Source: Mytilus edulis
Lineage: Eukaryota
Assembly (NCBI RefSeq): GCF_963676685.1
Contig: NC_092344.1
Span: 60,698,001 to 60,762,000 of the forward strand
Direction: 5' to 3'
DNA length: 64,000 nucleotides
Shown: positions 25,188 to 49,682 of the stretch, piece by piece
Position numbering within the stretch: position 1 is the stretch's first letter
How the letters are laid out: the number at the start of each line of letters is the position of its first letter
Position numbers and translations under genes: made by a program
The notes under the pieces: model-generated
Database searches by the model: none
Seen by the model: the letters and a program-made list of their open reading frames with translations, nothing else
What the model was told of the DNA's origin: nothing

Positions 25188-25390
25188 AGAGGGTGGTAAA
25201 GAGTTATTTTCGTGCAAAGTGTTTTGTCATTTTTATTTCACGTGCAGACGTGAAAAAGGTTCGTTATTCACCGTGTTTCGTGAAATCGGTAAAAAGATCA
25301 ACTTACATGAAAATTTAAATTGTTCGTTCATCGTGAAACGGCAATTTTATTTCGCGTTATTCTGTGCAGATACCTCTCTTTACGCCCTCT
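25188..25390. mobile_element. Old MITE
   Basis: TIRs AGAGGGTGGTAAAGAG / CTCTTTACGCCCTCT with internal CGTGAAA repeats. Confidence 0.5.
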
Positions 25391-26885: not shown

Positions 26886-27236
26886 GTAAGTATATCAATA
26901 TATTATCTTTTTGTTTAAATATTTGTTGTTATTTTATAGAATAATTTATTTTTGGTTAGAATTCGATTGTTACATAGATACGACGTAGATGTCTTTAGTT
27001 TTGTGTGTGGTTACGTTGTTTTAAAAATAAGAATTGAATGATAAAATCAGATTTAGACAATCAATTGAAAACATTGTTTTGTTACAAGGACTTAAGATTT
27101 ACCAAGAATTTTTTTACCAAACTTGTAGATCTGTTAAAAGACACAAACTTTAAGAACTTTTTGAGAGTACAAAGTTATGTCTGTACTTTCCCTCCTGTTG
27201 ACATTTTCATGACAATTTTAGATAAACACAGACACC

Positions 27237-27699
27237 ATGAAAAGTAAATGGAAAAACTTTCTTAACCTTCAAGACAAAGAATACCATGTTTTTGCCAATT
27301 ATAGTGAAGATGACGGTGAATTGGTAAGCAAGTTGTTGCAGCCCTTCGAGAATAGAAATTGTTTGTTCTACAATCCTGATCGAGATGGGTTACCAGGTCT
27401 ACCAATCATGCGCGGTCTTATCGAAAAAGGAATGGAACAGTCCAAGATTACCATGCTTTTTATTACGAAGAAATTTTTGTCTGATGAGTTGTGTATGTTT
27501 ATGGCCAATCTTGCTATTTGGAAGTACATGAAAACGAAAGGAATTCATCGTGTTTTACCAATCATCCTTCAACCATGTAAAATACCAAGATATCTGAAAG
27601 TCTTAAACTGTATTCATGTCTGGAAATACGCAACTACTAGATCAAGTCATATGTTGTACAAGACGCAAGCCATCACTCGGTTAACGAAAGCCATGCTAG
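27237..27699 (+). CDS. Gene A TIR-domain exon
   Basis: Acceptor TTTTAG ends at 27221, ATG in ACACCATG context, donor CTAG/GTAAT at 27700. Confidence 0.9.
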
Positions 27700-30600
27700 G
27701 TAATATTTCTAATACACTCTGTTTGATTATATCATACTATTTTCATTTTTACTGAATGTATACCCTGTCTATCATAGTGAGTGCACGTTATATTTTCTGG
27801 TCGTTACGTCTGTTCATGTATGTCCCTTACCAGGTCAACAGTCTGGTTTAAGTGGAAATTAGTGTGTGTTATTGTAGTAAGTTGGTTTTAAGCGGAATGA
27901 TAATTACATCAACTTGTAACTTACAGCACATGTACATGCTAATGGGTTTTACAAAAAAAGATACATGATAAGTTGGGGCTGAACCAAGATTTCGCAGCTC
28001 ACAACGAATCCAAGAATCATTAAGGAACAACGAATGCGATATGGTGACTGAGGATAATGTCGTATGGGTATAGATTTTTGTTTATTACTTAATTTTTCAA
28101 AAGACTTATTAGTTATTTGCTGAGATTGTTTCATATATATATTTTTTATCTATCAAAGTCGCGAGAATATCTAATCATCAATAAAGATCGAGATTACACA
28201 CCACCTTTTTTCTGAAATTTTCAATTTCATATAAAAAAATATTGCCACTACACATAAGAAATAATTATCTCAATAAGCCTTATGAATAGACTGACGATAA
28301 AAATTCCAATCATATCATCAGGGGAATAATCAGTTTCTGTGTTTGTTTGATCAAACTTAAATAAAAACTGTTAGCGGGATTCGTAATTGCGTTTAAATTA
28401 TGATGAACAGTTGAAATATTCTAATCGTTTTTTTTTATACTAATTTTTTATTCTAATGTATTTTTTAAAATATGACACTGATATGAATTTATAACTTGAT
28501 TGTATATACATGTTATTGTTTGTCTTGTTTGGTTTCTGTCTCTTTGACATGTACAAATCAGCATCTTTTATTCGTTTTGTTTTAAAGATTATTAGGTTTA
28601 AGTACACTAGAAAAGGGAAGTAATGAAGAAACATGATAAAATAGGTACTTTGCATAACAAAGTATCTACTTCGCATAGAGATAGTGTACCAAAGGAGTAG
28701 GTCCGGTAAGGACCGATTTTGGCCTCAAATTTCAGGTTCCTCTAACGAAAGTTTTTGGATACTTTTTAAACACTTAAGTGTCTATTTCAATTGATTCGAT
28801 TAGTTTATGTGAACAATTTTAACTGATTTAGTCATTAAAAACGCTCTGATTCAAGCTTAAATATGAAAAATCTATCAAATATGTCAAAAAACGTTACTTT
28901 TCAGATGGTTTTTGTCAAAAATGAAAGTAGCCGCATCCGTGTTCATCCTCAACCTTTATATATATTTTGTATTATCATCAAATACAACTTACATTTCAAT
29001 ATTATGAATGAACACGAATGCGGCCACTTTCATTTTAGACGAAAACCGTCTAAAAATTAACCAAAATGCTTAAATTTTGAAGATTTCAGTAATTTAGCAT
29101 GACTTAATGATGCTAGTACGCGATATGTGTGCATTGTATTGTCAAAAAAAGCTCATATTTATGTAGCAGCATTTTACTTTCCAAAATATAGCTTAAAGAT
29201 TACATTTTCACAATTTTGTAAAACTGCTATATTTTGGGGCCAAAAAGGGGTCTTACTGAACCTACTCCTTTAAATACTATCGATTACTTGATAACAGTCC
29301 AAAAGGTATAGATCCTCAATGCTCTTCAACTTTGTATTTGTTTGTCTTTATAACGTTTTTGATCTGAGCGCCACTGACGAGTCTTATGTAGACGAAACGC
29401 GCGTCTTGCGTATGAAATTATAATCCTGGTACCTTTGATAACTATACTGTACACAAAATAGGACATAATGTAATAGCGTAAATACGGAAACACGAAACAT
29501 AAATAAGAAACCATAGTTCATTATTATGAAAGCACATCCTGGGCCATGAAAATTAATCCATACAATATAACAAGATAATTGCATAATATATCAATCGACC
29601 ACAAGATGTCATGAAATAGGAAACATATTATATCAAAACAAATGTACTAAAGTTTCAAATAGCCAAGGTACATAGAACAAAGCATGGTCTTTAAAAATAC
29701 TTTGTATAATAAATGAAAATAGAGAATGCGGAAGTTGAATATATTAAATTGGGTTGTATACTTTTTGTGAAGGTCGAAAGACTTTGGTTGAAAACAAAAT
29801 TTAATGCAAATTCTTTTAATGTTCCAACAAAATGTTGGCAGGTCCTGAAAAGGAGGGGGGGAATTCAACCGAACAACTACATAGTAACAGGTGCATAGTT
29901 CTATCTGTCACGTTTAAAGGATCTGGATTGAAACTTTACGATGAGTTATTTACACACAATAAGCAATTTCTGTGGTAAATTTTCCTGAAAAAAATATTTT
30001 CAAATTCTCCAAATTTGGGGAATAGAAAAAAATCATAAAAACAATTCCATATAAACAAATGATGATTATCAACAAGTGCGTAATCGTTCTGTGAAGTGTC
30101 ATGGATCTGGATTAAAAACTGTATGAATAGGTGATAACACTAAATAGGTTCCCATTTTCCCCCGCCAGATCGACCTGGCCAAAACAAAATGTTATTACAA
30201 ACTTCACTACATGCGTTTAATACAAGTGTCAAACAAGTTTTGTAGCTTGTTGTTTTTGCTTTGATTTTGTGATCATGAAGTGTCTGAGTGTGGTATTTGA
30301 GCGCTTTGTTGATTTGCGTAACTACACCTCAATCACCAAACTTTTTATTGCTGCTTATACGTTTTATCTTCAACCAATACTGATTTAAAACATATTGACT
30401 ATGAACAATTTAAAAAATATTAGCCTCCGTAGGTTTCGTAGATAAAAGACGAATAATTTATATTGAAGTCAAGTTTTGCCAAAACTAAATAGATATGGTT
30501 TTATCAATATTAAAGCAAATGGACGGGAATCATGCTGAATACTTTGTTGAATGATGGGGTAGTCATTTTAAGAAGGTTTTTAATTATTAAGTGTCGGCTT

Positions 30601-33600
30601 GCGTTAGTCTTGCCATACAAAACTTTCAAGTAAGTACTTATGGAAACTATGCATACCAAATCTTAAGAGTTTTACACCATTTTTTATTACATTTCTTGAT
30701 TTTTGCAGTTTTTATTTTATTTTATTTTAGACCCACCACCAAAATTTAGACGAATAAGATGGAATGGAATAAAAACACTGACGTGGACACATAATATTGT
30801 GGAAAAAGTAAAGAAATCGGCTTTGAAAGAAAAGGCTTCAAATCAGTCAATACACAACATCAATCTATTTCAACTATGGCGATTAATAGGTGTATTAAAA
30901 CATTGCTTTCTAAACTGCCGGTACGGTCATTGTTCATTTGCTTGCAGTGGAAGAGAATTCACCAGATTTATAAGCCATGCAGAAAGATGCAGATATAGAC
31001 CAATCAAGTGTCCAAACAAATCTTGCCAGACTTTCCTCCCGAAGTGGTGTGTCGATAAACATGTGGAAGAGTGTCCACTAACCAGGCTAACGTGTCCATC
31101 AGTTGGATGTGGAAAGGAAATCATAAGATATCAAATAGAACAACACTTGTTTAAATGTCAACATCGCACTATTTTGTGTCCGAACCACCATTACGGATGT
31201 GACCAACGACTTACACAAAAGGACGCCTTCAAACATTCTGAGACCTGTTTGTTTGCTTCATTTCTTTGCAATAAATGTGGTCAAATAATAATAAAAAAAG
31301 ACATACATGAACATGAAAAGTATTGTATAAAGTCTGAAACAAAATGCAAGCTTTGTAAAAAGACGATGCTTCGTGAAGAAGAGCTTTTTCACTTGGACGT
31401 TTGCGAAATGGTGGTAGTCTCTTGTCCAAACATAGGATGTGGAATAACAATTGCCAGGCACAAAATTTCACAACACAAGTCAAAATGCTTACTCACGAAT
31501 ATCTGTTGTCCAAATTCTGAAAGAGGATGTAACGCCAGAGATAAAAGAATGAGTATACAAAATCATACTGCATGGTGTCCATTTCGACTCTCAGAGTGTG
31601 AGTTTTGTGGGAGAAAATTGATTTTCAAGAAACTTAATTTCCACATTAAAAACTGTCAGACGAAGAAGACATGTCCATTATGCGGATCGTCCTTTCCTAG
31701 GTTAAGATATTTTAATGCAGGCTACGAAAAGGCAAATCGTAAAAATGAACAAATAAAATCATGACCGAAATAAAAAGTATACACAGAAATTAAACGATAC
31801 AAATCGTATCATGTATTTGGAAGGGTAAACTGTTCCTGTTCTAAAGGGTTTAATGTGTTAAATTGTTGACCACTGCTGAAAAATGTGTTGTTAATAAGGA
31901 TTGTATATCTAACTTAAATACTATTTTAAATAACATGTAAAAGACTTATTGTCCCTGTTTACAATCATGTCCGGTCTAAATAAGGATATGTGTTCAATTT
32001 AATCAAAATTAAACATAAGATTTAGATCTCGAGGTTATGGGTCAATGTAAAACAGTTGTATGCCCTCTGCTCTTTGTGGTGTCATTGTCCATTTCTAGAA
32101 CTTTCAATAATAATGAATTATTTTGTACTTTTGGAATTTCTTTGTAGGTCAACTTGGGAAACTCACGAGCGTACGTGTCAAAGGAATAACAGGCGTCAAT
32201 GTGCTGGCGTTTATCCTGTGAGAACTGACACATTAGAAGACAACAAAAAGTTATGTACGGAGCATGATTACACTCCTACAGTAGTAAGTCTTCTGTATTA
32301 TCCATTTGTGAAAGTGAAAATGCATAGAAGCGGTCATAACTTTATACCAAAGTGAACAAACCTTTTTTTAATTTCGGGTGTGCTATGTGAAATGACAGGA
32401 GTCTACCTAAAGTTGAGTAGGAATTTTATTTATCGCTATTAGTTTAGCTGAACGTTAAAAACAAATGTTTTAATAATATATTTACATGTAAATAAACTGT
32501 CTTTAAAAGTGTCAACATGCCATCATTTGAAAATATTCCTATTTTAAAGTGTCGACCTGCCGATTTGCCGACCACTAAATACATAGGTATTTACTTCATT
32601 TTTTCGTTCAAAATTGACTACTTTTTATATTGATGACTATTAACTGATTAAATTTTGAAATATTCCAAGAACTATTGACTTGAATACAAGAAGATTAACG
32701 ATGCATGTGAGACATCGGGTGTTCTGTCTTTATGTTTTTAATTTACAGGAGCAACCTGGTTCATATTTACCTGATGGTCCAGCATATTCTCCTCAACATG
32801 AACAGCCACCAAAAAGTAAGAACAGTTTTAATTAATTTACAGTCTTCTTCTATTTTGTTATGAATAGAAACAGCAATTTAAACTTAAATGAAAATGATTT
32901 TCATGTCCACCACAAATTTGAAGCGTCTTGTGACTTCCCTCTTTCCCATAGGAAATTGAGCAATAGTAAATGACTGTTCCAAGTTGGGAACTTCTCAAAT
33001 GGTCGTCTTTTGTTATAATATCCTCTAAATGTTATGTTTTTAACCAAAATCTGATAGTTCCTGTTTGTTTTATTTTATATTTAAGAATTGTGTGCGATTA
33101 AGAACTACACAATGTATTGACAATTAACTGGTTCTCATCAGTTGGCGTCCGTCGTCTGTCGTCGTCGGTAACTTCAACAAAAATCTCTAAAATTACTGGT
33201 AAAATTTTACCATTAGTTTTCAAAATGTGGTCAACGAACCCTCCTGCCAACCGACATAGTCGACATGGCTTAAAATGGAACAAAGATTCAAAATGCAAGA
33301 TCAGTTAATTATCTTGAAAACTGCTATAAATAGAAGGAAAAAAAGGGCTGAAAGATTCAGAATGTTGATATCTACCTGCTAGTCACTAACGTCTAAACTG
33401 TCAGACGACGTTTTATAGGAGTTATCATCCTTGAAGGTTACATTTTACCATTCATTATATATTTGTGTATATCAAAATATAATTAAGACAGAAATAATTT
33501 AATTGGGATGAAGAATCACAAAGACAAGATCTTCATAAAAACTAAACATGGCCATAATAACAAGACCACTCCACATTGAAGTAATTGCCCTTCAATGACA

Positions 33601-34349
33601 GTTTTTTTAAACCTTTTTTGATAATTTAAAAGCATAAATTTTTAAAAATCAACAATCACTTGCAGGACAAAATTCATTAACATGTTAACATCTTGAAGAT
33701 CTAGTTGCGCAACACAGGCTCTTTAGAGTATGTAGCTAATAATTATTTGAAACTAAAAGGAATCGTACTATAATTGTTTTCTCAACATTAGCTTATGCCC
33801 ATTTAATATTTTTACTTTCATAACAGATTCACTCGTCAGTTCAGTAAGTTCGAGGGGAATTTATCGTACAAATTGTGACTCAAATACATGTTTTAATAAT
33901 TTGTATGAAAAGTGTTCATACAAATTAATCTATAAGGGATCTGAACGTAAAATGTATCCACATTTTCCACACCATTTTAGATCTTCATATTCTTCCTACA
34001 TAATTTTTTCATTTAAATTGAAAATCCGATTTATATACATGATAATTAAACGAGGTGTAGGCATAACTTCAGCTACGCAAAATCACAAAACCCCAAGGTA
34101 AAGATCACCATCATAAGTTTTATACGACTAGATTGCAATTAAATTATTTTAGGTGATCCTAAAGACAATCATCATTCTACTTATGGAAAAAGTACAGTTT
34201 CAATTCTATGGCGAACAAGAACAAGTAGTGGCTGTTCAGAAAATGGTGGACCTCAGACCTTGGAAGATTTTCTAAAAGAAATTCTCCGCACGAATATTAA
34301 TTTGAATTCGTTCGTCGAAAAGAAACGAAAAGCTGGATTCCAACATTAA
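27237..34349 (+). CDS. TIR-domain + TRAF-type zinc-finger array protein, paralogue A (about 610 aa); join(27237-27699,30731-31700,32148-32283,32749-32815,34153-34349)
   Basis: All junctions GT-AG with consistent phases (1,2,0,1); 1833 nt open to TAA. TIR motifs YHVFANYSEDD, DRDGLPG, RVLPIILQPC; 10 C-x2/4/6-C..H-x3-C fingers. Same exon structure as paralogue B. Confidence 0.85.
28693..29269. mobile_element. Kolobok-like MITE in a gene A intron
   Basis: TIRs AGGAGTAGGTCCGGTAAGGACC / GGTCTTACTGAACCTACTCCT. A decayed half-copy lies at about 47440-47705. Confidence 0.7.
29367..29411 (+). ncRNA. Minimal type I hammerhead ribozyme (retrozyme fragment, about 29322-29445)
   Basis: GCGCCA-CTGACGA-GTCT(TATGT)AGAC-GAAA-C(GCGC)G-TC^-TTGCGT: intact catalytic core, 4-bp stem II, palindromic minimal stem III, one mismatch in stem I. 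Confidence 0.75.
30731..31700 (+). CDS. Gene A TRAF-type zinc-finger exon (970 nt)
   Basis: Acceptor TTTTAG ends at 30730, donor CCTAG/GTTAAG. Nine complete fingers plus the first half of finger 10. Confidence 0.9.
32148..32283 (+). CDS. Gene A exon (end of finger 10, degenerate finger 11)
   Basis: TTTGTAG acceptor, STWETHERTC.., donor GTAAGT at 32284. Homologous to 46742-46895. Confidence 0.8.
32749..32815 (+). CDS. Gene A small Pro-rich exon
   Basis: TTTACAG / GTAAG, phase 0 to 1, EQPGSYLPDGPAYSPQHEQPPK. Confidence 0.65.
34153..34349 (+). CDS. Gene A terminal exon
   Basis: TTTTAG acceptor. ENGGPQTLEDFLKEIL aligns with B DDGGPESMEAYVAAIM. TAA at 34347-34349. Confidence 0.7.
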
Positions 34350-35455
34350 ACATTTACATCTACAAGAACACTCTTCTTTGTGATGTTTTTAAGACAGGTC
34401 GTAGACGCAAGAATTTATTATGCCAACACAATGAAACAATTTGTATTAACTGTCCTTGAGTTTATCTTTTGTAATGTTAAGTGTAACTGATGCCAATCAT
34501 TAAACGTTTCTTGATAGAACTGAAAAATAGTGATTCAAATTTAACCGTATATCGTACATAAGTCAATAATGTCTTGTGAAACATACATCGTGAACGTTTG
34601 GGAGCAATATTTTTAATCATATGCATAATTATAAAGTTTCGAAACCCATAATCAAAGAAAACTACCAAAATATTGGCCTGTTAAGCGCAGGATAAATATG
34701 TAAATTTACCCTGCCAAGTACACTCTGTTTTTTAAAATGTATATCTGTTTTGTATCGATCTAATTGCGTTTAATACCTTTCAACTATTTAAAGTGTGTTC
34801 TCGTTTGTACTGTTACGTCACTGTCCCAGGATAGGAGAAATGTTGACGCTCATAAGAACTAATTTAACTTCGCAACATTCTGATTCTGCCCAAGTCATGA
34901 GCCTCTAACTCAGTAATTGTCGTTTGTTTTATATCATATTTGTTTTTTATTCATTTTAAAATATATATAAATAAGGGCGTTATTTTTCTCGTTTGAATTG
35001 TTTTACATTTGTCATTTCCAGACGTTTTATAGTTGACTATGCTGTATAAGTTTTACAAATTATTGAATGCCATACGGATATGTTAATGTCTATGTCATTA
35101 AGTCTCTGGTGAAAGGTTGACTCATTGGCATTGATGCCATATCTTCTAATTCTTATAATGACTAAGGATTTCAGTGTATCTGTATAAATTTGATTAACTT
35201 ATGTCTCATCCCTTTTGCATATTTAAGCAAATGAAAGATGTCTAAACTGAACTAATCAAAGAGTTATTGTTAATTAAAGACCTTTTTACCAATGTTTTGC
35301 AGTCTTGTTTGTTCCGATCATTTGATCTGTAATAGATTAAGCAATCAGCAAAAAATACTTTCAAGGCAAATAATACTTCATACAGGAGTTAAAGCTCTTG
35401 AATGTCGATTTTCGTCAATTTTGGAGTAAAATTCTTAATTGATTGGTAAATATAG

Positions 35456-36519
35456 AAACAAGAGTGCACACACTGAAATGTCTCGCCTTCTTAACTAATC
35501 ATTGATATTATGTTAATGGTCCTAAATATAAAGCTTTATTACAACTATCATAAAAACTTAACCAAGAAACTAAACATTGACCAATGAACCATGAAAATGA
35601 GGTCAAGGTCATATGAACCATGCCAGACAGGCATGTACAGCTAACAGTTCTTCCATACAAATATAGTTGACCTATTGCTTATAGTTTAAGAAAAACAGAC
35701 CAAAACACAAAAAATTAACACTGAGCAAAGAACGGTGAAAATGAGGTCAAGGTCAAATAAAACCCGTACGACTAATATGTAGATCATAAAATATTTCCAT
35801 ACACCAAATATAGCTGACCTATTGCAATTAGTATTTGAAAAAAAGAACAAAACTCAAAAACTTAACTTTGACAACTGAACCATGAAAATGAGGTCAAGGT
35901 CAGATGACACCTGCCAGTTAGACATGTACACCTTTCAATCATTCCATACACCAAATATAGTAGACCTATTGCATACAGTATAAAAAAAATAGACCAAAAC
36001 ACATCAACTTAACTATAACCACTGAACCATGAAAATGAGGTCAAGGTCAGATAACATCTGCCAGTTGGACATGTACACCGAATATACTAAACCTGTTGCT
36101 TATAGTATCTGAGATAAGGACTTGCCCACCAAAACTTAACCTTGTTCACTGATCCATTAAAATGAGGTCGAGGTCAAGTGAAAACTGTATGAAATGCATG
36201 AGGACCTTGCAAGATACGCACATACCAAATATAGTTATCCTATTACTTATAATTAGAGAGAATTTAACATTACAAAAAATCTGATTTTTTTTTCAAGTAT
36301 TCACTGAACCATGAAAATGAGGTCAAGGACATTGGACATGTGACTGACAGAAACTTCGTAACATGAGGCATCCATATACAAAGTATGAAGCATCCGGGTC
36401 TTTCACTTTCTTAAATATAAAGCTTTAAGGAAGTTAGCTAACGCCGCCGCCGCCGTAACTGCCGGATCAATATCCCTATGTCATGCTTTCGGCAACAAAA
36501 GTTGAACACTCGACAAAAA
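35456..36519 (-). mobile_element. HINE with about 146-bp internal satellite
   Basis: AAACAAGAG end, repeats of ATGAAAATGAGGTCAAGGTCA, (GCC)n, A-run end. Absent at the homologous site near 40775. Confidence 0.8.
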
Positions 36520-37690
36520 TCATCAACAAACTAAGATCGGCAATTCAGTCAACATGGCTTAATTGTCAGCTAATTCCGGATATAAGACATTGCTCTGAAT
36601 TTTTGCCTGTTTCACTTTTTGTGTATGTACATGTAATATGCATAGTCAATGAGATAAAATATTGTTACTTAATGTTGCTTGTTTTCTTTTTATGTATTGT
36701 ATGTATTTCCCCGGCAATTAATGCTGTTTATCATTTGTCTTATTGTAAAATTGTGTTCGTTGCTATAGCATATATAATGCTTTCTGCAATAAAGTATTCA
36801 TTAATTCATACAAGCAGTTCATCTACTTTATTTATAGACTGTCAACATTGAGGTTGTTAGTTTGAACCTAGCTCATGACAAGATCGAACTTCGATATTAT
36901 TTGACTTGGAATGCCAGGTTTCATGCTGAATGTTGGTTGTTTCTTCTGGTCACTCCGACGTCTTCTACCATGTGTATATTGAATATATGGATTAAATTGA
37001 AATGTGAAAAATCAACAAGTACATGGTTTGTTCAATGCTTGGGAAAGTACAACATGTACAAAAAAGACTTTAAATTTTAATTATGCATGTTGAACACCTG
37101 TAGCTTTGAATAAAAAAATCACACTGTTTGATGAGCCAGGCACTTACAGAGTTTATAATTTGGTCAGATGATAATTATGCATATGCAATATTCAATTTAA
37201 ACGTAAACCATTATCGGTAAATGCGTTCACAGCACCACATAATGGTTCCTATCCGAAAGGGTGTGTCATACCATTGTCATCAATATAAAGATGGTTTTGT
37301 CCTGCTACAAATATAGAGATATCAAATACCATGTCCCATCTTCATTAGCTATGACCTCTTCATCAGATTGATATTGCACCATCACTTAAATATTTACTAC
37401 AGATTTAAAGAATCAGGGTGTAGAACTGTATCCTGACCCTCCCAAGCTAGCCACCATCGGCTTGTAAAGTCATACTTAAACGTAATAGTTATAGTAAATG
37501 TATGTGAACTTTATTGTGTGGAATCTGAGTTTACGGCGAACCAAAGGACATCGTATAGTTGAAAACAAGGAAAAAGAATGTTAAAACACAATAACCTATT
37601 GACGAAATCATAAAAAGATAGACAAAACAAGCAACTGTAGTATACCGATCTTTTAGAAGACATAAGTCGATTGAGGGAAAACGAAGATAT

Positions 37691-39040: not shown

Positions 39041-39261
39041 TGTATAATGACTCTCATTTATACATTTACAGCTTTTGAGCTTATCAAATACTACAAAATG
39101 ATAAATTTCTCATCTGTTCAGTGTACCAGGAAGGATAACTCTATACTATTTTAACAACTAGGAAGTGTTAAGGATATCCCATTTGGTGGTTGGTTAATTC
39201 AGGTTTTCATTACTTTAGTCTTTCATTTTGATCAAAAACGACCTCGGATGAAACTAGTATT
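39040..39261 (+). promoter_or_regulatory. Orphan duplicate of the gene B promoter and exon 1
   Basis: Near-identical to 42130-42368, with donor GTAAGT at 39262. It is followed by intron-1 homology to about 39900 but no TIR exon. Confidence 0.65.
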
Positions 39262-42129
39262 GTAAGTTTGTTAATACATATTTTTTTTAGAAATATTTTT
39301 AAGTTAAATATTTGTAAAATAAGTATGGAATAAAAAAATCTCGGTTAGAAATAATACATGTATGTCGGATGTTGATAAATATACAGGTAAGAAATATTTA
39401 TCTTTTGTGTGTGTATTGACTTACTGAGGCGTTTGATGTTTATCTGATTAAAATGCAGAAAATGAAATGTAACGATCTAATAATATCATGCGTCCTTTAC
39501 ACAACAAAACAGTTATATTAAATTTTATAATTACTTTCGAGTCTAATTGTTTTATGTGTTTTCGATTTTTAATTATTTTAATTTATTTTGGGGTATTAAG
39601 ATACACATCATTGAGCATACATTTGAGTGCAACGAATTATGGTCACCTTTTTGTTTTGGAATTTCGATTAATAATTTTTTAGGCTGTCGTCTGAAATATG
39701 TTATCTGTAATACAAAATGTTCCTACTGTATGCACGCCATCATTATTATTGAGTAAAGGCTAAACTGGAACTGTTTGATAAAAAACCCCAAAAAACATTA
39801 TTGTTATGCATCTGATTACTGCTACCAATTTGATCGGAATCGAAAATCTACTGGAACGATGAATGAACTGCCTTTTCTTCGCTTTTAAATCTGAAATTTT
39901 CAAAACAATGCGTTCTGTAAATCCCCCCGAATAATGCATATACCTCTTACTTAAAAATTAATGCATAATGATTTTCTGATAGAGATCTAAAAATACAAAT
40001 AAACAGGGCTTAGTTCAGGATATTTCTTGAACACAAATTAAAACAGTCAATAATTTCTTGTGATGCATACATCATGAACGTTTGGGATTCAATATTTGTA
40101 ATACTAAGTAATATATATAATTATAAAGTTTCGAAGCCCATAAGTAAAGGACACTACCAAAATCGTGGCCAGTATAGCGCAGAGTAAATATGTATATGTA
40201 TTGTACTGTTACACCACTATCTCAGTATAGGGGGAGTTGGCGCTCATTCAAATTAGTTTTACTTCGCCACATTCTGAAAGTGCCTGTCCCAGGTCGTGAG
40301 CCTCTAACTCAGTAATCATCGTTTGTTCTATATCATATTTGTTTTTCATTCATTTTTCTACATAAATAAGGCCGTTTGAATTGTTTTACATTTGTCATGT
40401 CCAGGCCTTTGATAGTTGACTATGCTGTATAAGTTTTAAAAATTGTTGAATGCCGTACGTATATGTTAATTTCTATGTCATTGTGTCTCTTGTGAAAGGT
40501 TGACTCATTGACATTGATACCACATCTTCTAATTCGTATAATAGCTAAGGATTTCAGTGTACGGATTATAAAAGTCATTGTTATTAAAGACCTTTTTGAC
40601 CAATATTTTGAACTTTTGTTTGTTCCAATCATGTAAAAGATTAAGAGAAACGTCTATCAGCAAAAAATACTTTGAAGGAAAATAAGTCAGTTGAGTTTTT
40701 ATAGGAGTTAGAGCTCTTGACTGTTGATTTTTATCCATTTTGAAGTAAAATTCTTAATTATTTGGTAAATATAGAATAACTGATCAGCAAACTAAGATCG
40801 GCAATTCCGTCAACATGGCTAAATTGTCAGTTGATTACGTATATAAGACATTGATCTGAATCTGCACCTGTTTTACTTATAAAGACATTGTGTAATTACA
40901 TGTTAGGCATAGTCAATCAGATAGCATATTGTTACTTAATGATGCATGTTTTCTTATTATGTATTTTATGTTTTGCCCCGGCCATTACTGCTGTTTATCA
41001 TTTGTCTTATGGTAAATATGTTTTCGTTACTACAGCGCTAGCATATATAAAGCTTTCTGCAATAAAGTATTCATGTATTCATGCAAGCATTTAATCTACA
41101 TATCACTAGCCTGTCAACACAGAGGTTGTGAGTTTTAACCAAGCTCATGATAAGATCGAACTCCGATCGTATTTGACTTGGGTTGCCAGTTTTCATGCTG
41201 AATGTCGGTTGTTTCTTCTGGTAATCCTGACGTCTTCCACCATGTGTATATTGAGTATATGGATTAAATTTAAATGTGTAACATTAGCAAGTGCATGGTT
41301 TGTTCAATGCTAGGGAAAGTACAACATGTACAAAAAAGACATTAAATTTACATGTTGAACATCTGCAGCTTTGAATAGAAAATCACATTGTTTGATGAGC
41401 CAGGCACTTGCACATTAGAACAATGCAGAATTTATATTATGGTCAGATTATAATTAGGCATATACAAGATGCAATTTTAAACGTAAACCATTGTCGGTAA
41501 ATGCGTTCACAGCATCACCCAATGGTCCCTACCCGAAAAGATATGTCATGTCATTGTTATCAATATTAAGATGATGTTGCCCTGCTACAAATGTAGATAT
41601 CAAATACCATGTCCAATCTCCATTGGCTATGACCTTTTCATCAGATTGATTTTGCAACTTACTACAGATTTAAAGAAGCAGGGTGTAGAACTGTATCCTG
41701 ACTTTCCTCAAGCTAGCCATCCTCGGCTAGTAAGGTCATATTAAACGTAAAAGTTATATTGAATATATGTGAACGTCGTCGTGTGGAATCTTCATTTGAA
41801 ATTTTATTAACAAAAATTGTTTATAAAGAAACAAAATAAGAGAATTTCACTTCCTCAAGATTTGATTTCTAACATGAGCAAATCGTTACCTCTGCTGTTC
41901 TTACATCACATGGTTGGAGATGTATATTTGTGACGTATATTAGCTCCACCTATTTACTTCCTAAATTCATAGCGAACCAAAGGGTATCGTAGAGTTGAAA
42001 ACAAAAGAAACAAGGAAAAAGAAATGTTAAAACACAATAAACTATTGACGAACTGATAAAAAGATAGACAAAAAAGGCAACAGTAGTATACCGATTTTTA
42101 AAAGTCGATTGAGGGAAAACAAAGATATA

Positions 42130-42368
42130 TATGTATAATGACTCTCATTTATACATTTACAGCTTATGAGCTTATCAAATACTACAAAATGATAAACTAT
42201 CGTCACCTCAACGTATCAGGAAGGATAACTCTATACTATTTTAACAACTAGGAAGTATTAAGGACATCACGAAATTTGGTGGTTGGGTAATCCTTGAGGG
42301 GTAATCCAGGTTTTCATTACTTTAATCTTCATCTTGATCTAAAAACGACCTCGGATAAAACTAGTGAT
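42130..42368 (+). promoter_or_regulatory. Putative promoter and non-coding exon 1 of gene B
   Basis: Conserved motif block, donor GTAAGT at 42369. Confidence 0.55.
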
Positions 42369-43171
42369 GTAAGTTTGTTAATATACTTTCTTTTTTTTAA
42401 ATATTTTTAAGTTAAATATTTGTAAAATAAGTATGGGATAATTTATTTTCGGTTAGAAATAACACATGTATATCATAGGTAAGAAGAATGTATATATTGT
42501 GTGTGTATTGACTAAGTTAAAATATGTGACGTTGGGTGTTAATCTGATTAAAATGCAGAATATAAAATATAACATATTAATCTAGAATCACACGTCCTTT
42601 ACACAACTAAACAGTTACAATTTATATATACTTTCCAGTCCGATTAACTAATTGATGTGTTTTCGATTTCTAATTTATAATAAATTTGTTTTGGGATGTT
42701 AAGATACACATCATTGATCAAAAATATGAGTGCAACGAAATATGGTCACCTTTTTGTTTTGGAATTTCGATGAATGCTTTTTCATGCCAAAGTATGTAAC
42801 ATGTCAGTATAGATTTAACAGGAACTGCTTGATAATAAAAATCAAATCAAAATTGTGTACACTTTAACATATAAACACTATTGTTATGCATCTACTTACT
42901 GCACCCAGTTTGCTGAGCCTCGACTTTATTGGACTTTATCTACTGACAAGATGAATGAACATGCAGGCTACATTTTTCTTTAAAATCCCTGAATTAAAAA
43001 AAAAACATACGGGCCCCAACTAACTCGTAGTTTTAATGTACCAAAAAACTATTAAAACATTTTAAGAGTACACAATTTCTTCCTGAATTGCCTTTAAAAA
43101 GTACACTTATATTTCTGTATTTCCTTGTTTGTTTGAATTTTATATGACAATTTTAGATAAACACAGACACC

Positions 43172-43631
43172 ATGGAAAGTAAATGGAAAAGCTTTCTAAA
43201 CCTCCAAGACAAAAGATACCATGTCTTTGCCAGTTATAGTGAAGATGATAGTCAATTAGTAAACGGCTTGTTACTGCCCTTTGAGAATAGTAATTGTTTG
43301 TTCTACAACCCTGATAGAGATGGGTTACCAGGTCAACCAATCATGCGCGGTCTTATCGAAAAAGGAATGGAACAGTCCAAGATTACCATGCTTTTTATCA
43401 CAAAGAATTTTCTGTCTGATGAGTTGTGTATGTTTATGGCCAATCTTGCTATTTGGAAGTATATGAAAACAAAAGGAATTCATCGAGTGCTACCAATCAT
43501 CCTTCAGCCATGTAAAATACCCAGATATCTGAAAGTTTTGAACTGTATCCATGTCTGGAAATACACATCAAGATCAAGTAATATGATGTACCAGAAACAA
43601 GCCATTGCTCGACTAACGAAAGCAATGCTAG
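43172..43631 (+). CDS. Gene B TIR-domain exon
   Basis: Acceptor ends at 43156, ACACCATGG start, donor CTAG/GTAAT at 43632. Confidence 0.9.
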
Positions 43632-46600
43632 GTAATATTTTAGATAAGCTTTGTTCGAAATTCACGATTTTCGTATTTATGTTTATTTTTTTTAATTTTA
43701 ATAAGGTACATATAGTTTTCATCGAAATTGTAATCATATCAACTTGTTAACTAGAACACATGTGACACTGAAATGAAAACCTTACTTGAATCTATACATA
43801 TTATCACTGAACAAGTATATATTTGTTTAGGGGCCAGCTGAAGGACGCCTCCGGGTGCGGGAATTTCTCGCTACATTGAAGACCTGTTGGTGACCTTCTG
43901 CTGTTGTTTTGTTTTTTCTATGGTCGGGTTGTTGTCTCTTTGGCACATTCCCCATTTCCATTCTCAATTATATTTTATATGTTTGTGTTGGTGTTGGTGT
44001 TTGTGTTTGTTTTGTTTGGTTGTTGTCTCTTTTATTCAGTTTATTTTAAGGATGATTATATTTAAGTACATAAGGAAAAGGAAGTAATTGTAGTATCATG
44101 ATAAGTAAACACAACCAGTTTATGTATATACTTCACATAGAGATATTTGTACACATCGATTACTACATATAGTATTACAAAAGGTATTGCATACAAAAAA
44201 GGACATAATGTTATAGGGTACATATGTATGTAAACATGAAACATAATAAACAAAAACCACAGTTTCATATGGCCTACAAAAACCTTTTTGAAATAAATGA
44301 AATAGAAAACGAAGAAATGGTTTAAGAAAAAACCCTCCTTAGTGAGAGGTGGACAAATGAAATAGGTTTGTAAATCTATGCTTGAAGTTCGAAAGACATG
44401 GGTTGAAAAAGAAATTTAATTCATATTTTATTTTTTATTATAATGTTCCTGTAAAATGCTGGGGAAATTCATCCAAAAACTACATATTAGCAGGTGCACT
44501 GTTCTATCTGTGCAGTTTTAAGGATCTTGATTGAAAACTTTAAGGGGAGCTATTTACACAAAATAGGGAATTCAAAACTTTTAGGATGGGAAAAAATCTT
44601 CAAACAAGTCTATATCAACAAGTCATGAACATCAACAAGTAAGCAACCCTTCGACGAGGTTTCATAGATCTGGATTGAAAACTGTAAAACTGCACTGAAG
44701 GCCCACTAAATAGTTACCCATTTTTCTCTACCAGCTCGTCCATCTTAGTGCAACCCGGCTAAAAACAACATGTTATCACAAACAACACTACCTGAGAAAG
44801 AGACTGCGTTCAATACAAATGCAAAACCAGATTGTAGCTAGTTATTTCATGAGTCTGAGTGTGGTATTTTAACACTGTGTTGCTTCGCCTAACTAAAACT
44901 CTACAACTCAATGAAAAGATAACAACGTTTTTATTACAGCTAGTACAGGGTTTCATTAATCAATACTGATCAAAACCAAGTAATATGGTATGAACAATCA
45001 AACAACTTTTGCCTTCGTAGACTTCATTGAGTAATTTACGAGCAATAAGCAATGGAATTCAAGTTTTGATTATTCTCAAAAGAAAATTGAATGCTGTGGT
45101 AGACTTATCATAATGAGTAGGTTTTTTCCTAAAGTTTTACGTAATAGCTTGGGAATAAGTCTTACCAAAAGATTTCTATTTAAAATGTGCAACCAAGTAC
45201 TAACGGAAACTTTGTTTTGCGAATGTAAAGGAGTTTAAACCCTTTTGTATCACGTTTCGTAATTCTTACAATTATCATTTATTCTATTATAGAACCACCA
45301 CCAAAATTTAGACGAATAAGATGGAATGGAATAAAAACACTGACGTGGACACGTAATATTGTTGAAAAGGTAAAGAAATCGGCATTGAAAGAAAAAGCTT
45401 CAAATCAATTAAAACACAACATCAATCCATTTCAATTATGGCGATTAACTGGTGTTTTAAAACATTGCTTTCTAAACTGCCGGTACGGTCATTGTTCATT
45501 TGCTTGCAGTGGAAGAGAATTCACCAGATTCATAAGCCATGCAAAAGTATGCAGATATAAACCAACCAAGTGTCCAAACAAAGCTTGCCAGACTTTCCTC
45601 CCGAAATGGTATGTCGATAAACATGTCGAGGAGTGTCTTCACACCTGGATAACTTGTCCATCAGTTGGATGTGGAGAGACAATCACAAGATATGAAATAA
45701 AACAACACTTGTTAAAATGTAAACATCGTTCCATTATTTGCCCAAACCACCATTTTGGATGTGACCAACGACTAACAGGAGAGAACGCTTCCAAACATTC
45801 AGAGAACTGTTCATTTGCTTTAATTCTTTGCAATAAATGTGGTCAAGCAATGATGAAAAAAGGCTTACATGAGCATGAAAAGTTTTGTGTAAAGTCTGAA
45901 ACAAAATGCAAGCTTTGTAAAAAGACGATGCTTCGTGAAGAAGAGCGTTTTCACTTGGACGCTTGTTTAATGGCGGACGTCGCATGTCCCAACATAGACT
46001 GTGGATTAACAATGGCAAGATACAAAATTTTACAACACAAGTCAATATGCTTACACGCAAATATCAGTTGTGCAAATTCTGGAAGGGGATGTAAAACAAG
46101 AGACAAACGAATTAATATACAAATTCATGCAGCATCATGTCCATTTCGAATGTCACAGTGTGAGTTTTGTGGGAGAAAATTGACTTTCAAGAAACTTAAT
46201 TCCCACATAAAAAGATGTCAGACGATGAAGAAATGTCTTTTATGCGGATTGATGGTTCCAAGGTAAAATTATTTTAATGTATTCTAAGAATAAATAAGAC
46301 CTTAACCAATTTCCAAAATAAAAAGTATACACACAGGTGGCTAATGAACAAATGACACGATTATATATCACATCTAGTGCTTCGGAAGAACAGTGCTATG
46401 GTAACTGCTTATTTTACAGGTCTAACTGTTTATCCATTCAATAACCATAGGTTAACTGTTTGCATATTATTGTTTATTGTTCAATGATCAGATTGAGAAC
46501 AAACCTTTTTTTTTTTATCTAGCTTAAAGTAAAAGATTGCAAAGCAAATTTAAGGTCGATATAGCACGTGGTATGAACTGCGAATCGCAAAAAAGGTTAA

Positions 46601-49600
46601 TTCTATCATGGCAATGAAACAAGAAATAGCAAAGGCAACATTAAAATCTTCACACTAGCAATCAATGTTATATGAAAATGCATTCAAGTTATATGTTAAA
46701 TTTTAAGGAATCTTATTAATATTTTTGAATTTGTCCTACAGATCAACATGGGGAACACATGAGCGCACTTGTCCAAGGAAGAATTGGCAGTCATATTGTG
46801 ACGTGTGTCATAAATTAGTGAGAAATGACAAAAAAGAAGACCACAAAGAGTTATGCATGGAACATGCTCACACTTCTCAACAATATGCATCTGCAGTAAG
46901 CCATTTTCTATTACAAATGTAGTAAAAGTGAAAAGTAAATCAGTTGTAGGCTCCAAACTATTGTATGTGTGGTACAGTGGTAGTATCATAAAGGGAAAAC
47001 GGACAGGAGTTTACTTTATCCTATGTTCACAGTTCACTACAAATGTTGTTTTCGCAAAAGGCGCAAAAATACTTTACCTTTTGGAGCATCAACTTAGGGA
47101 CGACATCAAAAGTTCAATGTAGGATAAAAAACTTAATTCACATAGTTTTTTCACTGACCCCCACCCCCCCTCTTAACTTAATTTGGGAAAAATTGATTTA
47201 CCAATAGGGATATATGTAAAAATCGATTTTAAATATACAAAACTTGCAGAATTTTAACCCCCCACCCCCAAACTATTTGATTTAGGTTTTTTTTTTATCC
47301 TACATCGATCTTTTGATGTCGTCCCTTACTTTGAACTATTTTTCTTCGTACTGCAATAAAAAGGTCACGTGAAATAAAAGCTAATGTGATGTTATGTTGA
47401 GATAAAATGTTATGTAATATCAAAAATAAATATTAAAACTTACCATAATTGCGGTCACTTCCATTTTAGACAAAAAACGCCTAAAATTAGCACAATTGCT
47501 CAAATTATGAAGATTTCATTATTATTGCATGGCATAATGATACTTTTACCTGATGCATGACAAGTGTATCAATTGTCAAATACAGATTACATTGTATTTT
47601 ACAATAGCTATCTACTTTGAAAAAATTGCTATAATTTACATTATCATCAACTTTGTAAAAACCCTAGATTTATGGGCCCAAAATGTCTTACCGGGCCTAC
47701 GCCTTTCGGAATTGTTTCATGTGCATGAATGTGAACATAATAGATACTTTGCATCATGTACTGATAAAGACGAACTTATCAGTACTTGGAACCTAATTTT
47801 CCCATACAAATTATTTTGTATTTTGCAGACATGCGGATCTGACAGTTTAATTGTCGCTGCCGGAGCTACACATTTCAATATGCCTGTTACCTCAGAAACC
47901 AGAAACCAGATCGACAGTAAGTTTTCTCGGGTTTTTGATTGTGTGTTGGATAATCACTCCCAATACATGATAGTCTCCTCTCTAGTTACTTTACGATAAG
48001 TGCATGAACTCGTCGGTTCAATTGAAAGTTTTGCCATATTAAAGATTTAAAAATTATCATTTAATGCTTCGCCAAAAACGCAACATTTGGGAGGGTGTGG
48101 AAAAGGTTTACCGAATAGAGATTAATAGACAAAATGTGCAGAATAGAGGGCATCCATATATAGAATAGAAAAAAATAGGCCCAAAAAATAATGAATGGAA
48201 AATAAGGGGGTGCTTAGATATAGTAAGAATAGTTAATAACAGACCAAATTTATAAAGAATATTGATATAAAAGATTAAAGAATAAAGAAATGAAGATTCT
48301 CGTATATCAGAAGGCTAAGAAAACAATTGGTCTGCTCAAAGTTGAATCATGAATTATACATGTAGTGGATATTACCATTGGACGTAAATTAACCATACTT
48401 TTTCCTTTTTAATTATTCAAATTTCTTGTTTATAGACCCTACATTATGGAGTAAAATAAAACCATAATATTAATACAAAGAATTACTGCTTTTATAGAAA
48501 AACATTTTGATATTATACCTTTTTGTACTTCCTTGTTACATATTTGCTTGTTTTTATAGTTATTAAGATTAAAAAACAATGTAGACTGCTGTACCCTTAT
48601 TATGGACATTTTTACCTATTATTTCTATATAAAATAGAAGATGTGGTATGATTGCCAATGAGACAACTCTCTACAACAGTCCAAAAGTACACCGAAATTA
48701 ACAACTATTGGTCACCGTACGGCCTTTAACAATTAGCAAAGCCCATACCGCATTATCAGCTATAAAAGGCCCCGAAATGTTTGTTTTGTTCATAATGATT
48801 CTTCGTTGTCATTATTATGGAATATGATGCGACTGTCATACAAGTGAGATGTTTAGCTAGCTATAAAACCAGGATCAGTCCGCCATTGTCTACATAAGAA
48901 AATGCCTGTACCAAGTCAGGGATATGACAGTTGTTATCAATTCATTTGATATATTTGAGCTTTTGCTTTTGCCATTTGATTATAAGGGAATTTTTGCTTT
49001 GAATTTTTCTCGGAGTTCAGTATTTTTGTGATTTTTAATTTTCTCTAGTCGCATAAGTTCAGGCATTTATTCGACTGAATAAACAGTTCGTCATAAGACA
49101 AAAATAGCAAATTATTTATTTGTATAAAAAAGTGAGATAGTGGTTCGTCTTGGACAACATAATTATGTACTTAATAAATTGTATTTCCTTATTTGCATGT
49201 ACTGTTGAATTGCTAACAATATTAATATAATAGCTAATAAAACGAAAAGTGGGCTAAACGGTAACAAAAATGTAATTCAGCGAAATAAACAAAAACCTAG
49301 GGGATCATAACTTTTATTTCATTTATTTATCTTAGGTGAGACGATATTGTACAAACGTCATTCTAATGGAAAACGAACAGATTCCGATAAACGGTATTCC
49401 AGACATAAAAGTGACAGCTCAGATGATGGCGGACCAGAGAGCATGGAAGCGTATGTAGCAGCCATTATGAGCATGCACGATATCCCAGTTACCGTAAATG
49501 GACACAAGGAAGACTTCGAAAGCTCCGAACTTATTGGAGGGAGTCATTGTGCAAAGTCAAGGAAAACTTTTACCGGCATTTTGTCAGCAGCAAGTTCTTA

Positions 49601-49682
49601 CAGCGTGAAAGATTTGGAAATACACAAAGCCTTTGATTCCGACTTCAAACATTTCCATCGTCAGAGGGACTTTTACTCGTGA
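43172..49682 (+). CDS. TIR-domain + TRAF-type zinc-finger array protein, paralogue B (about 672 aa); join(43172-43631,45293-46262,46742-46895,47829-47916,49336-49682)
   Basis: GT-AG junctions with phases 1,2,0,1 as in A; 2019 nt open to TGA. TIR domain plus 11 zinc fingers. Confidence 0.85.
43822..43970 (+). mobile_element. Retroelement 3' tail fragment in a gene B intron
   Basis: Reverse-complement relative of 10692-10835, ending CATTCCCCATTTCCATTCTCAATT. Confidence 0.6.
45293..46262 (+). CDS. Gene B TRAF-type zinc-finger exon (970 nt)
   Basis: Same length and phase as in A; donor CCAAG/GTAAAA. Confidence 0.9.
46742..46895 (+). CDS. Gene B exon (end of finger 10 and intact finger 11)
   Basis: CTACAG acceptor, STWGTHERTC..YCDVC..DHKELC, donor GTAAGC. 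Confidence 0.8.
47097..47325. mobile_element. PIF/Harbinger-type (Tourist-like) MITE
   Basis: TIRs GGGACGACATCAAAAG / CTTTTGATGTCGTCCC, with TTA on both sides. Confidence 0.8.
47829..47916 (+). CDS. Gene B small exon
   Basis: TTTGCAG / GTAAGT, phase 0 to 1, as for A 32749-32815. Confidence 0.65.
49336..49682 (+). CDS. Gene B terminal exon
   Basis: CTTAG acceptor in frame with ORF 49347-49682. AATAAA at 49812. Confidence 0.75.

What the first reader, a model, noticed from the sequence alone, without database searches (positions are those of the whole stretch)
27237..49682. Tandem genes fusing a TLR-type TIR domain directly to 10-11 TRAF-type zinc fingers (no RING, no MATH)
Seen: phase-consistent splicing joins the TIR exon to a 970-nt zinc-finger exon in both paralogues, and no TM segment, death domain, RING or MATH domain is evident. 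Known: in TLR signalling, TIR adaptors (MyD88) and TRAF6 are separate proteins, and finger-only proteins such as TRAFD1/FLN29 act as negative regulators. Inference: a cytosolic adaptor that either short-circuits TIR-to-TRAF coupling or acts as a decoy. I do not recognise this architecture as a named family, although bivalves have many lineage-specific TIR proteins.
Basis: partly seen in the sequence, partly recalled or inferred. Interest (0 to 1): 0.78.

Follow-up and report, generated by a model that had tools for sequence, protein, structure and literature searches.

The report
Mussel TIR plus TRAF-finger adaptor genes
Two neighbouring mussel genes each encode a cytosolic immune-type protein with a Toll-receptor-like TIR domain followed by ten or eleven TRAF-type zinc fingers; the genes are real and are found across bivalves, but they are already in public databases, unnamed or mislabelled as TRAF6.

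Summary
The window carries two intact tandem paralogues. Gene 1 has a CDS of 1,833 nt (27237-34349). Gene 2 has a CDS of 2,019 nt (43172-49682). In each, a TIR exon is joined in phase 1 to a 970-nt exon of TRAF-type CCHC fingers, followed by three short exons. Gene 1 has 10 intact fingers and gene 2 has 11. No RING, MATH, death domain or TM segment was found.

Every exon translation is an exact substring of RefSeq XP_071127075.1 (gene 1) or XP_071127060.1 (gene 2), both "uncharacterized protein [Mytilus edulis]".

- **Transcripts:** transcript-like contigs cover the exons only and show two downstream GT..AG joints. The TIR-to-finger joint itself was not shown, because the tool masked the acceptor. 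It rests on the RefSeq models, on intron-less orthologue contigs, and on a third paralogue 8.4 Mb away.
- **Distribution:** the architecture occurs in at least 13 clusters at 50% identity. All 9 clusters that carry a name are bivalves, from Solemya to Mya.
- **Mislabel:** gene 2's 90% cluster holds AYA22142.1, "TRAF6 [Mytilus coruscus]". That label fails the TRAF6 membership test.
- **TIR type:** the TIR is closest to TLR1/2/6 and lacks the NADase glutamate.

The most likely role is a TIR-docked, RING-less finger scaffold in Toll signalling; whether it activates or inhibits is unknown. This is an uncharacterised but already catalogued family, of moderate interest.

The parts
27222..27699 (+). 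Gene 1, TIR exon. The ATG is at 27237. The exon start at 27222 is putative, placed after a conserved ttttAG.
   Evidence: Pfam TIR_2 at E 1.2e-8. Donor G|GT. The translation is an exact substring of XP_071127075.1 = P0170. Exon-only contig depth in X1, X2 and X5.
30731..31700 (+). Gene 1, 970-nt exon. It holds a conserved basic linker (PPPKFRRIRW...) and fingers 1-9, plus the first half of finger 10.
   Evidence: zf-TRAF at E 1.3e-24. Boundaries. Exact substring of P0170. Contig depth, and the joint 31700->32148 in 3 of 3 contig runs.
32148..32283 (+). Gene 1, exon with the second half of finger 10 and a degenerate finger 11.
   Evidence: Joints 31697(+3)->32145 and 32283->32749, both GT..AG, in X1, X2 and X5. 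Exact substring of P0170. Finger list.
32749..32815 (+). Gene 1, short Pro/Gln-rich exon.
   Evidence: Joint at 32749 seen.
34153..34349 (+). Gene 1, last coding exon, with stop TAA at 34347-34349. The tail is shorter than in gene 2 and lacks the family's C-terminal R-x-x-F motif.
   Evidence: Alignment A3.
43157..43631 (+). Gene 2, TIR exon. The ATG is at 43172. The exon start at 43157 is putative.
   Evidence: TIR_2 at E 3.5e-9. Boundaries. Exact substring of XP_071127060.1 = P0183.
45293..46262 (+). Gene 2, 970-nt linker and finger exon.
   Evidence: zf-TRAF at E 4.9e-25. Boundaries. Exact substring of P0183.
46742..46895 (+). Gene 2, exon with the end of finger 10 and an intact finger 11.
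47829..47916 (+). Gene 2, short exon.
   Evidence: The boundaries are fixed by the 2,019-nt sum and by the sequence of P0183.
49336..49682 (+). Gene 2, last coding exon, with stop TGA at 49680-49682. It carries the acidic Ser-rich stretch and the conserved R-x-x-F motif.
24854..25472 (+). Decayed solo copy of the TIR exon (a pseudo-exon).
   Evidence: 74-77% DNA identity to gene 2's TIR exon. In-frame stops, frame changes and an insertion of about 200 nt.

Best explanation
Shown. The two genes are intact, under purifying selection, and belong to a family found across bivalves. The encoded proteins are soluble. They have an N-terminal TIR domain closest to TLR1/2/6, a conserved basic linker, a rod of 10-11 tandem TRAF-type CCHC zinc fingers, and a low-complexity tail.

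Inferred. The TIR domain is a non-enzymatic docking module that joins the TIR assemblies formed by activated Toll-like receptors and/or MyD88. This brings a RING-less finger array to the receptor complex. The array would work as a protein- or ubiquitin-binding platform at the level where TRAF6 normally acts. The protein has no death domain, so it cannot seed a Myddosome. It has no RING, so it cannot be an E3 ligase. Its effect must therefore come from whatever the fingers bind. I lean slightly toward a positive, MyD88-parallel scaffold, but the sign of the effect is open.
For: - **Gene models:**
- **Expression:** the contig sets X1, X2 and X5 cover exons only and give zero depth in intron bins outside one repeat. 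They show two GT..AG joints in 3 of 3 runs.
- **Intron-less orthologue ORFs:** P0172 is 673 aa on a 2,193-nt Logan contig. P0010 is 719 aa on a 2,576-nt contig.
- **Third paralogue:** it lies at C1:69.18 Mb and keeps a TIR exon followed by a finger exon about 1.5 kb downstream.
- **Selection between genes 1 and 2:** dN/dS is 0.13 for the TIR, 0.15 for the linker and 0.54 for the fingers.
- **Family size:** 13 of the 47 best representatives carry zf-TRAF. All 9 named clusters are bivalves.
- **TIR relatives:** with the family profile, the nearest solved sequences are TLR2 (1.4e-8), Hydra TRR-2, TLR6 and TLR1. MyD88 and TIRAP score about 1e-4.
- **Finger relatives:** TRAF6 (6.8e-9), TRAF4, FLN29/TRAFD1 and TRAF5.
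- **No NADase glutamate:** the glutamate of TLR2's C-x-x-E motif aligns with Met. Only 1 of 18 family members has Glu in that column.
- **From established knowledge, not tested here:** TIR domains signal by homotypic assembly; the TRAF6 fingers lie next to the Ubc13~Ub site; TRAFD1 binds TRAFs.
Against: No interaction, localisation or induction data were obtained.

The BB-loop proline is kept in Mytilus but is not conserved across the family. That weakens the case for classical TLR/MyD88-type docking.

The raw-read RNA run X24 gave zero depth on the exons, with about 6% of that run read.

The TIR-to-finger joint was not seen in reads for this locus.

The CRISPR-associated TIR protein Cat1 scores about as well as the TLRs in the profile search (7e-8), so 'TLR-type' is a nearest-neighbour statement only.

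Confidence: 0.45

Rival explanations
1. Decoy or negative regulator. The TIR domain caps or competes within TLR/MyD88 TIR assemblies. The RING-less fingers sequester TRAF6, TRAF3 or ubiquitin chains, as the finger protein TRAFD1/FLN29 does in mammals.
For: RING, death domain and MATH are all absent. FLN29/TRAFD1 is among the nearest solved finger sequences (3.8e-8). There is a weak TRAFD1-XIAF1_ZnF match at 19-20 bits. From recalled knowledge: RING-less TRAF6 fragments and TIR-only proteins behave as dominant negatives.
Against: The TRAFD1-XIAF1_ZnF match is below Pfam's cut-off of 27 bits. Nothing here tells inhibition from activation. A simple competitor would not obviously need 10-11 conserved fingers kept since the origin of bivalves.
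Confidence: 0.25
2. Cytosolic sensor. The finger array is the ligand-recognition module, for polyubiquitin, nucleic acid or a pathogen effector, and the N-terminal TIR domain is the output. This would resemble the TIR-plus-repeat receptors of plants and bacteria.
For: The layout is an N-terminal TIR followed by a long C-terminal repeat array. The fingers evolve about four times faster than the TIR domain (dN/dS 0.54 against 0.13). Finger number ranges from 7 to 12 in the nine members counted, and fingers 5-7 are lost in the Imparidentia clade. One member has a UBZ-type match (P0008, zf_UBZ at E 1.4e-5).
Against: No ligand evidence exists. A dN/dS below 1 is also what relaxed constraint would give. 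No TRAF-type finger is known to me as a pattern sensor (recalled).
Confidence: 0.18
3. It is the mussel TRAF6, as GenBank AYA22142.1 and CAG2202934.1 label gene 2's orthologues.
For: Source names. The fingers match TRAF6 best among solved sequences.
Against: There is no RING and no MATH/TRAF-C domain at E <= 1, and there is an N-terminal TIR domain instead. A published table gives AYA22142 only 19.0% identity to pigeon TRAF6, against 36-40% for scallop and oyster TRAF6 (PMC7491236, passage seen).
Confidence: 0.02
4. The TIR and finger exons belong to separate genes, or the locus is a pseudogene pair.
For: The 27699->30731 joint is not in the read laying tables. A decayed solo TIR exon lies just upstream.
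Against: The reading frames are open, with an exact match to RefSeq models of 610 and 672 aa. The finger exon has no in-frame ATG near its start. Intron-less orthologue contigs encode both domains. Three paralogues and 13 representative clusters keep the same order. dN/dS is 0.13-0.54.
Confidence: 0.03

Closest known systems
TRAF6 (and TRAF4/5) zinc-finger region
   Same: Tandem CCHC TRAF-type fingers with a period of about 27 residues. These are the best solved-sequence matches to the finger array (TRAF6 5vo0 at 6.8e-9, TRAF4 2yuc at 2.4e-8).
   Different: No RING, no coiled coil detected and no MATH/TRAF-C domain. There are 10-11 fingers; TRAF6 has about 4-5 (recalled). A TIR domain sits at the N-terminus.
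TRAFD1/FLN29 and XAF1 (RING-less TRAF-finger regulators)
   Same: Finger proteins without RING or MATH. FLN29 2d9k matches at 3.8e-8.
   Different: Those proteins have no TIR domain. The TRAFD1-XIAF1_ZnF family match here is below the cut-off (19-20 bits against 27).
TLR1/2/6-type TIR domains and Hydra Toll-receptor-related 2
   Same: These are the nearest TIR sequences with solved structures. Box 1, the RD-x-x-PG BB loop (in Mytilus) and the P-C-x-(I/V)-P stretch align.
   Different: The protein is soluble, with no TM segment or ectodomain. The TIR is N-terminal. The glutamate of TLR2's C-x-x-E motif is Met here.
MyD88 / TIRAP / SARM1 (the classical cytosolic TIR proteins)
   Same: Cytosolic TIR-containing proteins of Toll pathways.
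   Different: No death domain (MyD88). No SAM/ARM repeats and no catalytic Glu (SARM1). These match the family profile less well than the TLRs do (about 1e-4).
Bivalve 'TIR-DC' proteins catalogued by Gerdol et al. 2017 (Dev Comp Immunol; recalled, not held)
   Same: Lineage-rich cytosolic TIR proteins with unusual partner domains. Open papers that cite the catalogue describe ecTIR-DC families (passages seen).
   Different: I could not check whether a TIR + zf-TRAF family is listed there.

Membership tests
TIR domain (Pfam TIR_2, PF13676) | Profile match above the gathering score | tested here: met
   35.9 and 37.6 bits against a cut-off of 28.
TRAF-type zinc finger (Pfam zf-TRAF, PF02176) | Profile match above the gathering score, with repeated CCHC ligand sets | tested here: met
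   87 and 88.4 bits against a cut-off of 27. 10 and 11 CCHC units. Ligand columns are invariant in 18 sequences.
TRAF6 / TRAF family | N-terminal RING finger | tested here: not met
   No RING family at E <= 1 in P0170, P0183, P0184, P0010 or P0008. The N-terminus is a TIR domain.
TRAF6 / TRAF family | C-terminal MATH/TRAF-C domain | tested here: not met
   No MATH family at E <= 1. The tail is low-complexity.
TRAF6 / TRAF family | Coiled-coil trimerisation region | not tested
   No coiled-coil predictor was run.
NAD+-cleaving TIR (SARM1, plant or bacterial type) | Catalytic glutamate | tested here: not met
   Met aligns with the Glu of TLR2's C-x-x-E motif. Only 1 of 18 family members has Glu in that column. 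That this position is the NADase glutamate is recalled, not tested.
MyD88 | Death domain N-terminal to the TIR domain | tested here: not met
   No Death family hit. The TIR domain starts at about residue 15.
Toll-like receptor | LRR ectodomain and a TM helix before the TIR domain | tested here: not met
   No LRR hit. The highest KD19 value is 1.61, inside a finger.
TRAFD1/XAF1 | TRAFD1-XIAF1_ZnF (PF21366) above the cut-off | tested here: not met
   13.8-20.1 bits against a cut-off of 27.
A named ecTIR-DC or bivalve TIR-DC family (Gerdol et al. 2017) | Listed domain organisation | not testable with these tools
   Paper not held. Supplements are closed.

The most novel reading that the evidence does not exclude
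The family is a bivalve-wide cytosolic receptor-adaptor. Its zinc-finger rod senses a ligand (polyubiquitin, nucleic acid or a microbial effector), and ligand binding drives assembly of the N-terminal TIR domain. That would open a MyD88/IRAK-independent branch of Toll-type signalling which has been overlooked because its members are filed as 'uncharacterized' or 'TRAF6'.
Probability: 0.15. Interest if true: 0.72.

Novelty: new variant of a known kind. Interest (0 to 1): 0.4.

Why it matters
First, annotation. Gene 2's orthologues circulate as 'TRAF6' (AYA22142.1, CAG2202934.1). AYA22142 has already been used as the mussel TRAF6 in a comparative table (PMC7491236). A 2018 paper on 'TRAF6' of M. 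coruscus exists (reference seen, text not held). Expression or knock-down results credited to mussel TRAF6 may therefore belong to this TIR-finger protein.

Second, biology. The fusion of a TIR domain to a long RING-less TRAF-finger array has been kept from protobranchs to heterodonts. It is a concrete, testable candidate for a non-MyD88 link, or a brake, in the much-expanded Toll system of bivalves.

Tried and rejected
**RNA joint for the TIR-to-finger junction.** The single read-laying run covered 27050-32950. The tool treated 30703-30735, which includes the acceptor, as a repeat and dropped the rows there. The key joint is therefore neither shown nor excluded. The raw RNA run X24 had no depth on the exons.

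I used the contig lengths printed instead.
I used sequence and profile searches against PDB chains.

**Searches that added nothing.**
- The protein-atlas search gave no usable hit.
- The profile run of the search for homologous proteins returned only Mytilus proteins, so it says nothing about other phyla.
- The search of earlier findings returned two unrelated notes.

**Literature.** Eight searches found no open paper describing a TIR + zf-TRAF protein. Gerdol et al. 2017 and Qi et al. 2018 are not held. Supplements were not requested. The DEG tables of PMC12488463 and the family tables of Gerdol 2017 could bear on which 'TRAF6' is meant and on whether the family already has a name.

**Readings rejected.**
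- True TRAF6: no RING or MATH.
- NADase TIR: no Glu.
- Separate genes or pseudogenes: see the rival explanations.

**Tree.** The tree is the quick version. The careful search did not finish and I did not rerun it.
Full report
**What is in the sequence.** ORF listing and reading of the junctions show two copies of the same arrangement on the + strand. In gene 1, an exon with its ATG at 27237 ends in G|GT at 27699. After a 3,031-nt intron, an AG acceptor precedes 30731, and a 970-nt exon runs to 31700. In gene 2 the same points are 43172, 43631, 45293 and 46262, and the exon is again 970 nt. Both junctions are phase 1. Pfam on the single exons gives TIR_2 at 35.9 and 37.6 bits (cut-off 28). It gives zf-TRAF at 87 and 88.4 bits (cut-off 27).

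**Full gene models.** tblastn with public proteins returned by the searches, followed by inspection of the splice sites, gives five coding exons per gene.
- Gene 1: 27237-27699, 30731-31700, 32148-32283, 32749-32815 and 34153-34349. These sum to 1,833 nt, or 610 aa plus stop.
- Gene 2: 43172-43631, 45293-46262, 46742-46895, 47829-47916 and 49336-49682. These sum to 2,019 nt, or 672 aa plus stop.

Each exon translation is an exact substring of P0170 (XP_071127075.1) or P0183 (XP_071127060.1/067.1). Both are "uncharacterized protein [Mytilus edulis]" on a 126-Mb contig. I did not build or search a joined model of my own; the whole-protein steps used these database entries. A CCHC pattern count gives 10 fingers in gene 1 and 11 in gene 2. 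Gene 1's eleventh finger has lost its first two cysteines, and its tail is shorter. A conserved ttttAG just upstream of both ATGs suggests an untranslated upstream exon, which I did not look for.

**Expression and splicing evidence.** The look-up of sequencing runs listed 20 runs from 11 studies that hold at least half of the sampled words of gene 1's finger exon. None is on record as RNA, and 14 are guessed to be RNA. I laid three of those contig sets (X1, X2, X5) and one raw RNA run (X24) on 27050-32950.

The three contig sets have depth on the exon bins. They have zero depth in the intron bins, apart from a high-copy repeat at 28626-29610. All three contain contigs that skip 31700->32148 and 32283->32749 with GT..AG ends. 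That is the behaviour of transcript assemblies.

The decisive joint 27699->30731 is not in the tables. The tool skipped 30703-30735 as a repeat and states that it dropped 3 joints and 1 loose end there. I make no claim from that remark. One X1 contig piece ends at about 27700: the variant at 27658 lies 42 letters from its end. X24 showed no reads on the exons, with about 6% of the run read.

**Indirect evidence for the fusion is strong.**
- The RefSeq models join the exons exactly as proposed, as does the older M. edulis model P0001.
- P0172 is a 673-aa ORF, 92-98% identical to gene 2 exon by exon. It comes from a Logan contig of only 2,193 nt, which leaves no room for introns.
- P0010 is 719 aa on a 2,576-nt contig.
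- The same genome has a third, diverged paralogue 8.4 Mb away. Its TIR exon is 43% identical and its finger exon 34% identical, and the finger exon lies about 1.5 kb downstream. It is the orthologue of P0010, at 81-82% identity.
- The finger exon has no nearby in-frame ATG.
- dN/dS between genes 1 and 2 is 0.13 for the TIR, 0.15 for the linker, 0.54 for the fingers and 0.44 for the next exon.

**Family and distribution.** A phmmer scan of 1.84 billion representatives with gene 1's TIR exon found 209 proteins at E <= 0.001, and 150 were listed. I scanned the best 47 with Pfam: 44 have TIR_2 and 13 have zf-TRAF. phmmer with the finger exon against all 153 proteins then held found the same set plus one fragment. 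The full-length members are 463-719 aa, with an N-terminal TIR domain.

Cluster look-ups name 9 of the 13 clusters, and all are bivalves: Solemya velum, Mytilus coruscus and M. californianus, Saccostrea echinata, Pinctada imbricata, Sinanodonta woodiana, Mactra antiquata, Dreissena polymorpha (two clusters) and Mya arenaria. Four clusters come only from unnamed Logan or ENA data. The 90% clusters of genes 1 and 2 add M. trossulus and M. galloprovincialis.

A quick ML tree of 26 rows (the careful search did not finish) broadly follows bivalve orders. It places the gene 1/gene 2 duplication inside Mytilus. I found no member outside bivalves, but the searches were not designed to exclude that.

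**What kind of TIR and what kind of fingers.** By single sequence, the nearest solved chains to the TIR exon are TLR6, TLR2 and Hydra TRR-2, at E 4e-4 to 3e-3. With the 18-member family profile, TLR2, TRR-2, TLR6 and TLR1 score 1e-8 to 9e-8. The CRISPR TIR protein Cat1 scores 7e-8. TIRAP and MyD88 score about 1e-4. The glutamate of TLR2's C-x-x-E motif aligns with Met, and only the Solemya protein has Glu in that column. From recalled knowledge that this Glu is the NADase catalytic residue, I read the TIR domain as a scaffold and not an enzyme.

The fingers match TRAF6, TRAF4, FLN29/TRAFD1, TRAF5 and FBXO30. No RING, MATH, death or LRR family appears at E <= 1 in five members, and there is no TM-like segment.

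In the family alignment, fingers 1-4 and 8-10 carry the invariant ligands. Fingers 5-7 are missing in the heterodont members. The linker motif K-F-R-R and a C-terminal R-x-x-F motif are widely kept.

**Mechanism.** The architecture and its conservation are shown; the following is inferred. The TIR domain docks by homotypic contacts to receptor or MyD88 TIR assemblies and places a RING-less finger rod there. The rod acts through what it binds, with TRAF6, Ubc13 or ubiquitin the obvious candidates. Whether this amplifies the signal, bypasses MyD88-IRAK or dampens it cannot be decided here. The faster-evolving and variable finger array leaves room for a sensor reading.

**Comparison and novelty.** The protein works most like a TIR adaptor that carries TRAFD1-like fingers. 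It is not a member of the TRAF family, because the RING and MATH tests both failed. It is not MyD88, a TLR or SARM1 either.

GenBank AYA22142.1 'TRAF6 [Mytilus coruscus]' and CAG2202934.1 'TRAF6 [Mytilus edulis]' sit in gene 2's 90% cluster. A published table gives AYA22142 19.0% identity to pigeon TRAF6, against 36-40% for other bivalve TRAF6 proteins (PMC7491236, passage seen). A paper on 'TRAF6' of M. coruscus (Qi et al. 2018) is cited in PMC12488463 (reference seen), but it is not held. That it describes this sequence is my inference.

No open paper describing TIR + zf-TRAF was found. The 2017 bivalve TIR-DC catalogue could not be read.

**Verdict.** This is a real, conserved and expressed gene family. 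It is already present in databases but is unnamed or misnamed, and as far as I could see it is functionally undescribed. It is a new variant of a known kind, of moderate interest.

Noticed in passing
window 24854-25472 (+): A decayed solo copy of the TIR exon lies 1.8 kb upstream of gene 1. It is 74-77% identical in DNA to gene 2's TIR exon, with in-frame stops, frame changes and an insertion of about 200 nt. blastn found no finger-exon remnant beside it.
   Followed up: partly
window 28626-29610 (intron 1 of gene 1); related copy at 47429-47706: A high-copy repeat without an ORF of 80 aa or more. Summed contig depth is in the thousands in X1, X2 and X5, and it is read on both strands in the raw RNA run X24. 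Many loose ends fall at 28690/28691, 29271 and 29445, as expected for a dispersed mobile element.
   Followed up: no
window 32148-32283 and 34153-34349 (gene 1), compared with 46742-46895 and 49336-49682 (gene 2): Gene 1 has lost the first two zinc ligands of finger 11 and the family's C-terminal R-x-x-F motif. Even so, it keeps an open 610-611-aa frame in M. edulis, M. trossulus and M. galloprovincialis.
   Followed up: partly
P0184 (AYA22142.1) in the tree: The GenBank entry labelled M. coruscus 'TRAF6' groups with M. galloprovincialis gene 2 and not with the M. coruscus genome protein P0171. The cloned sample or the label may not be what it says. This comes from the quick tree only.
   Followed up: no
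G000:C1:69176320-69179207 (loci L003, L015): A third TIR + finger paralogue lies on the same chromosome, 8.4 Mb away. It is the orthologue of a 719-aa protein with 12 fingers (P0010).
   Followed up: partly
window 39409-39832 and 42501-42912: A direct repeat of about 280-400 nt, 78-85% identical, lies upstream of gene 2. Short inverted matches of one repeat family occur at 20925-21140, 24272-24357 and 40396-40540, against 48626-49035.
   Followed up: no
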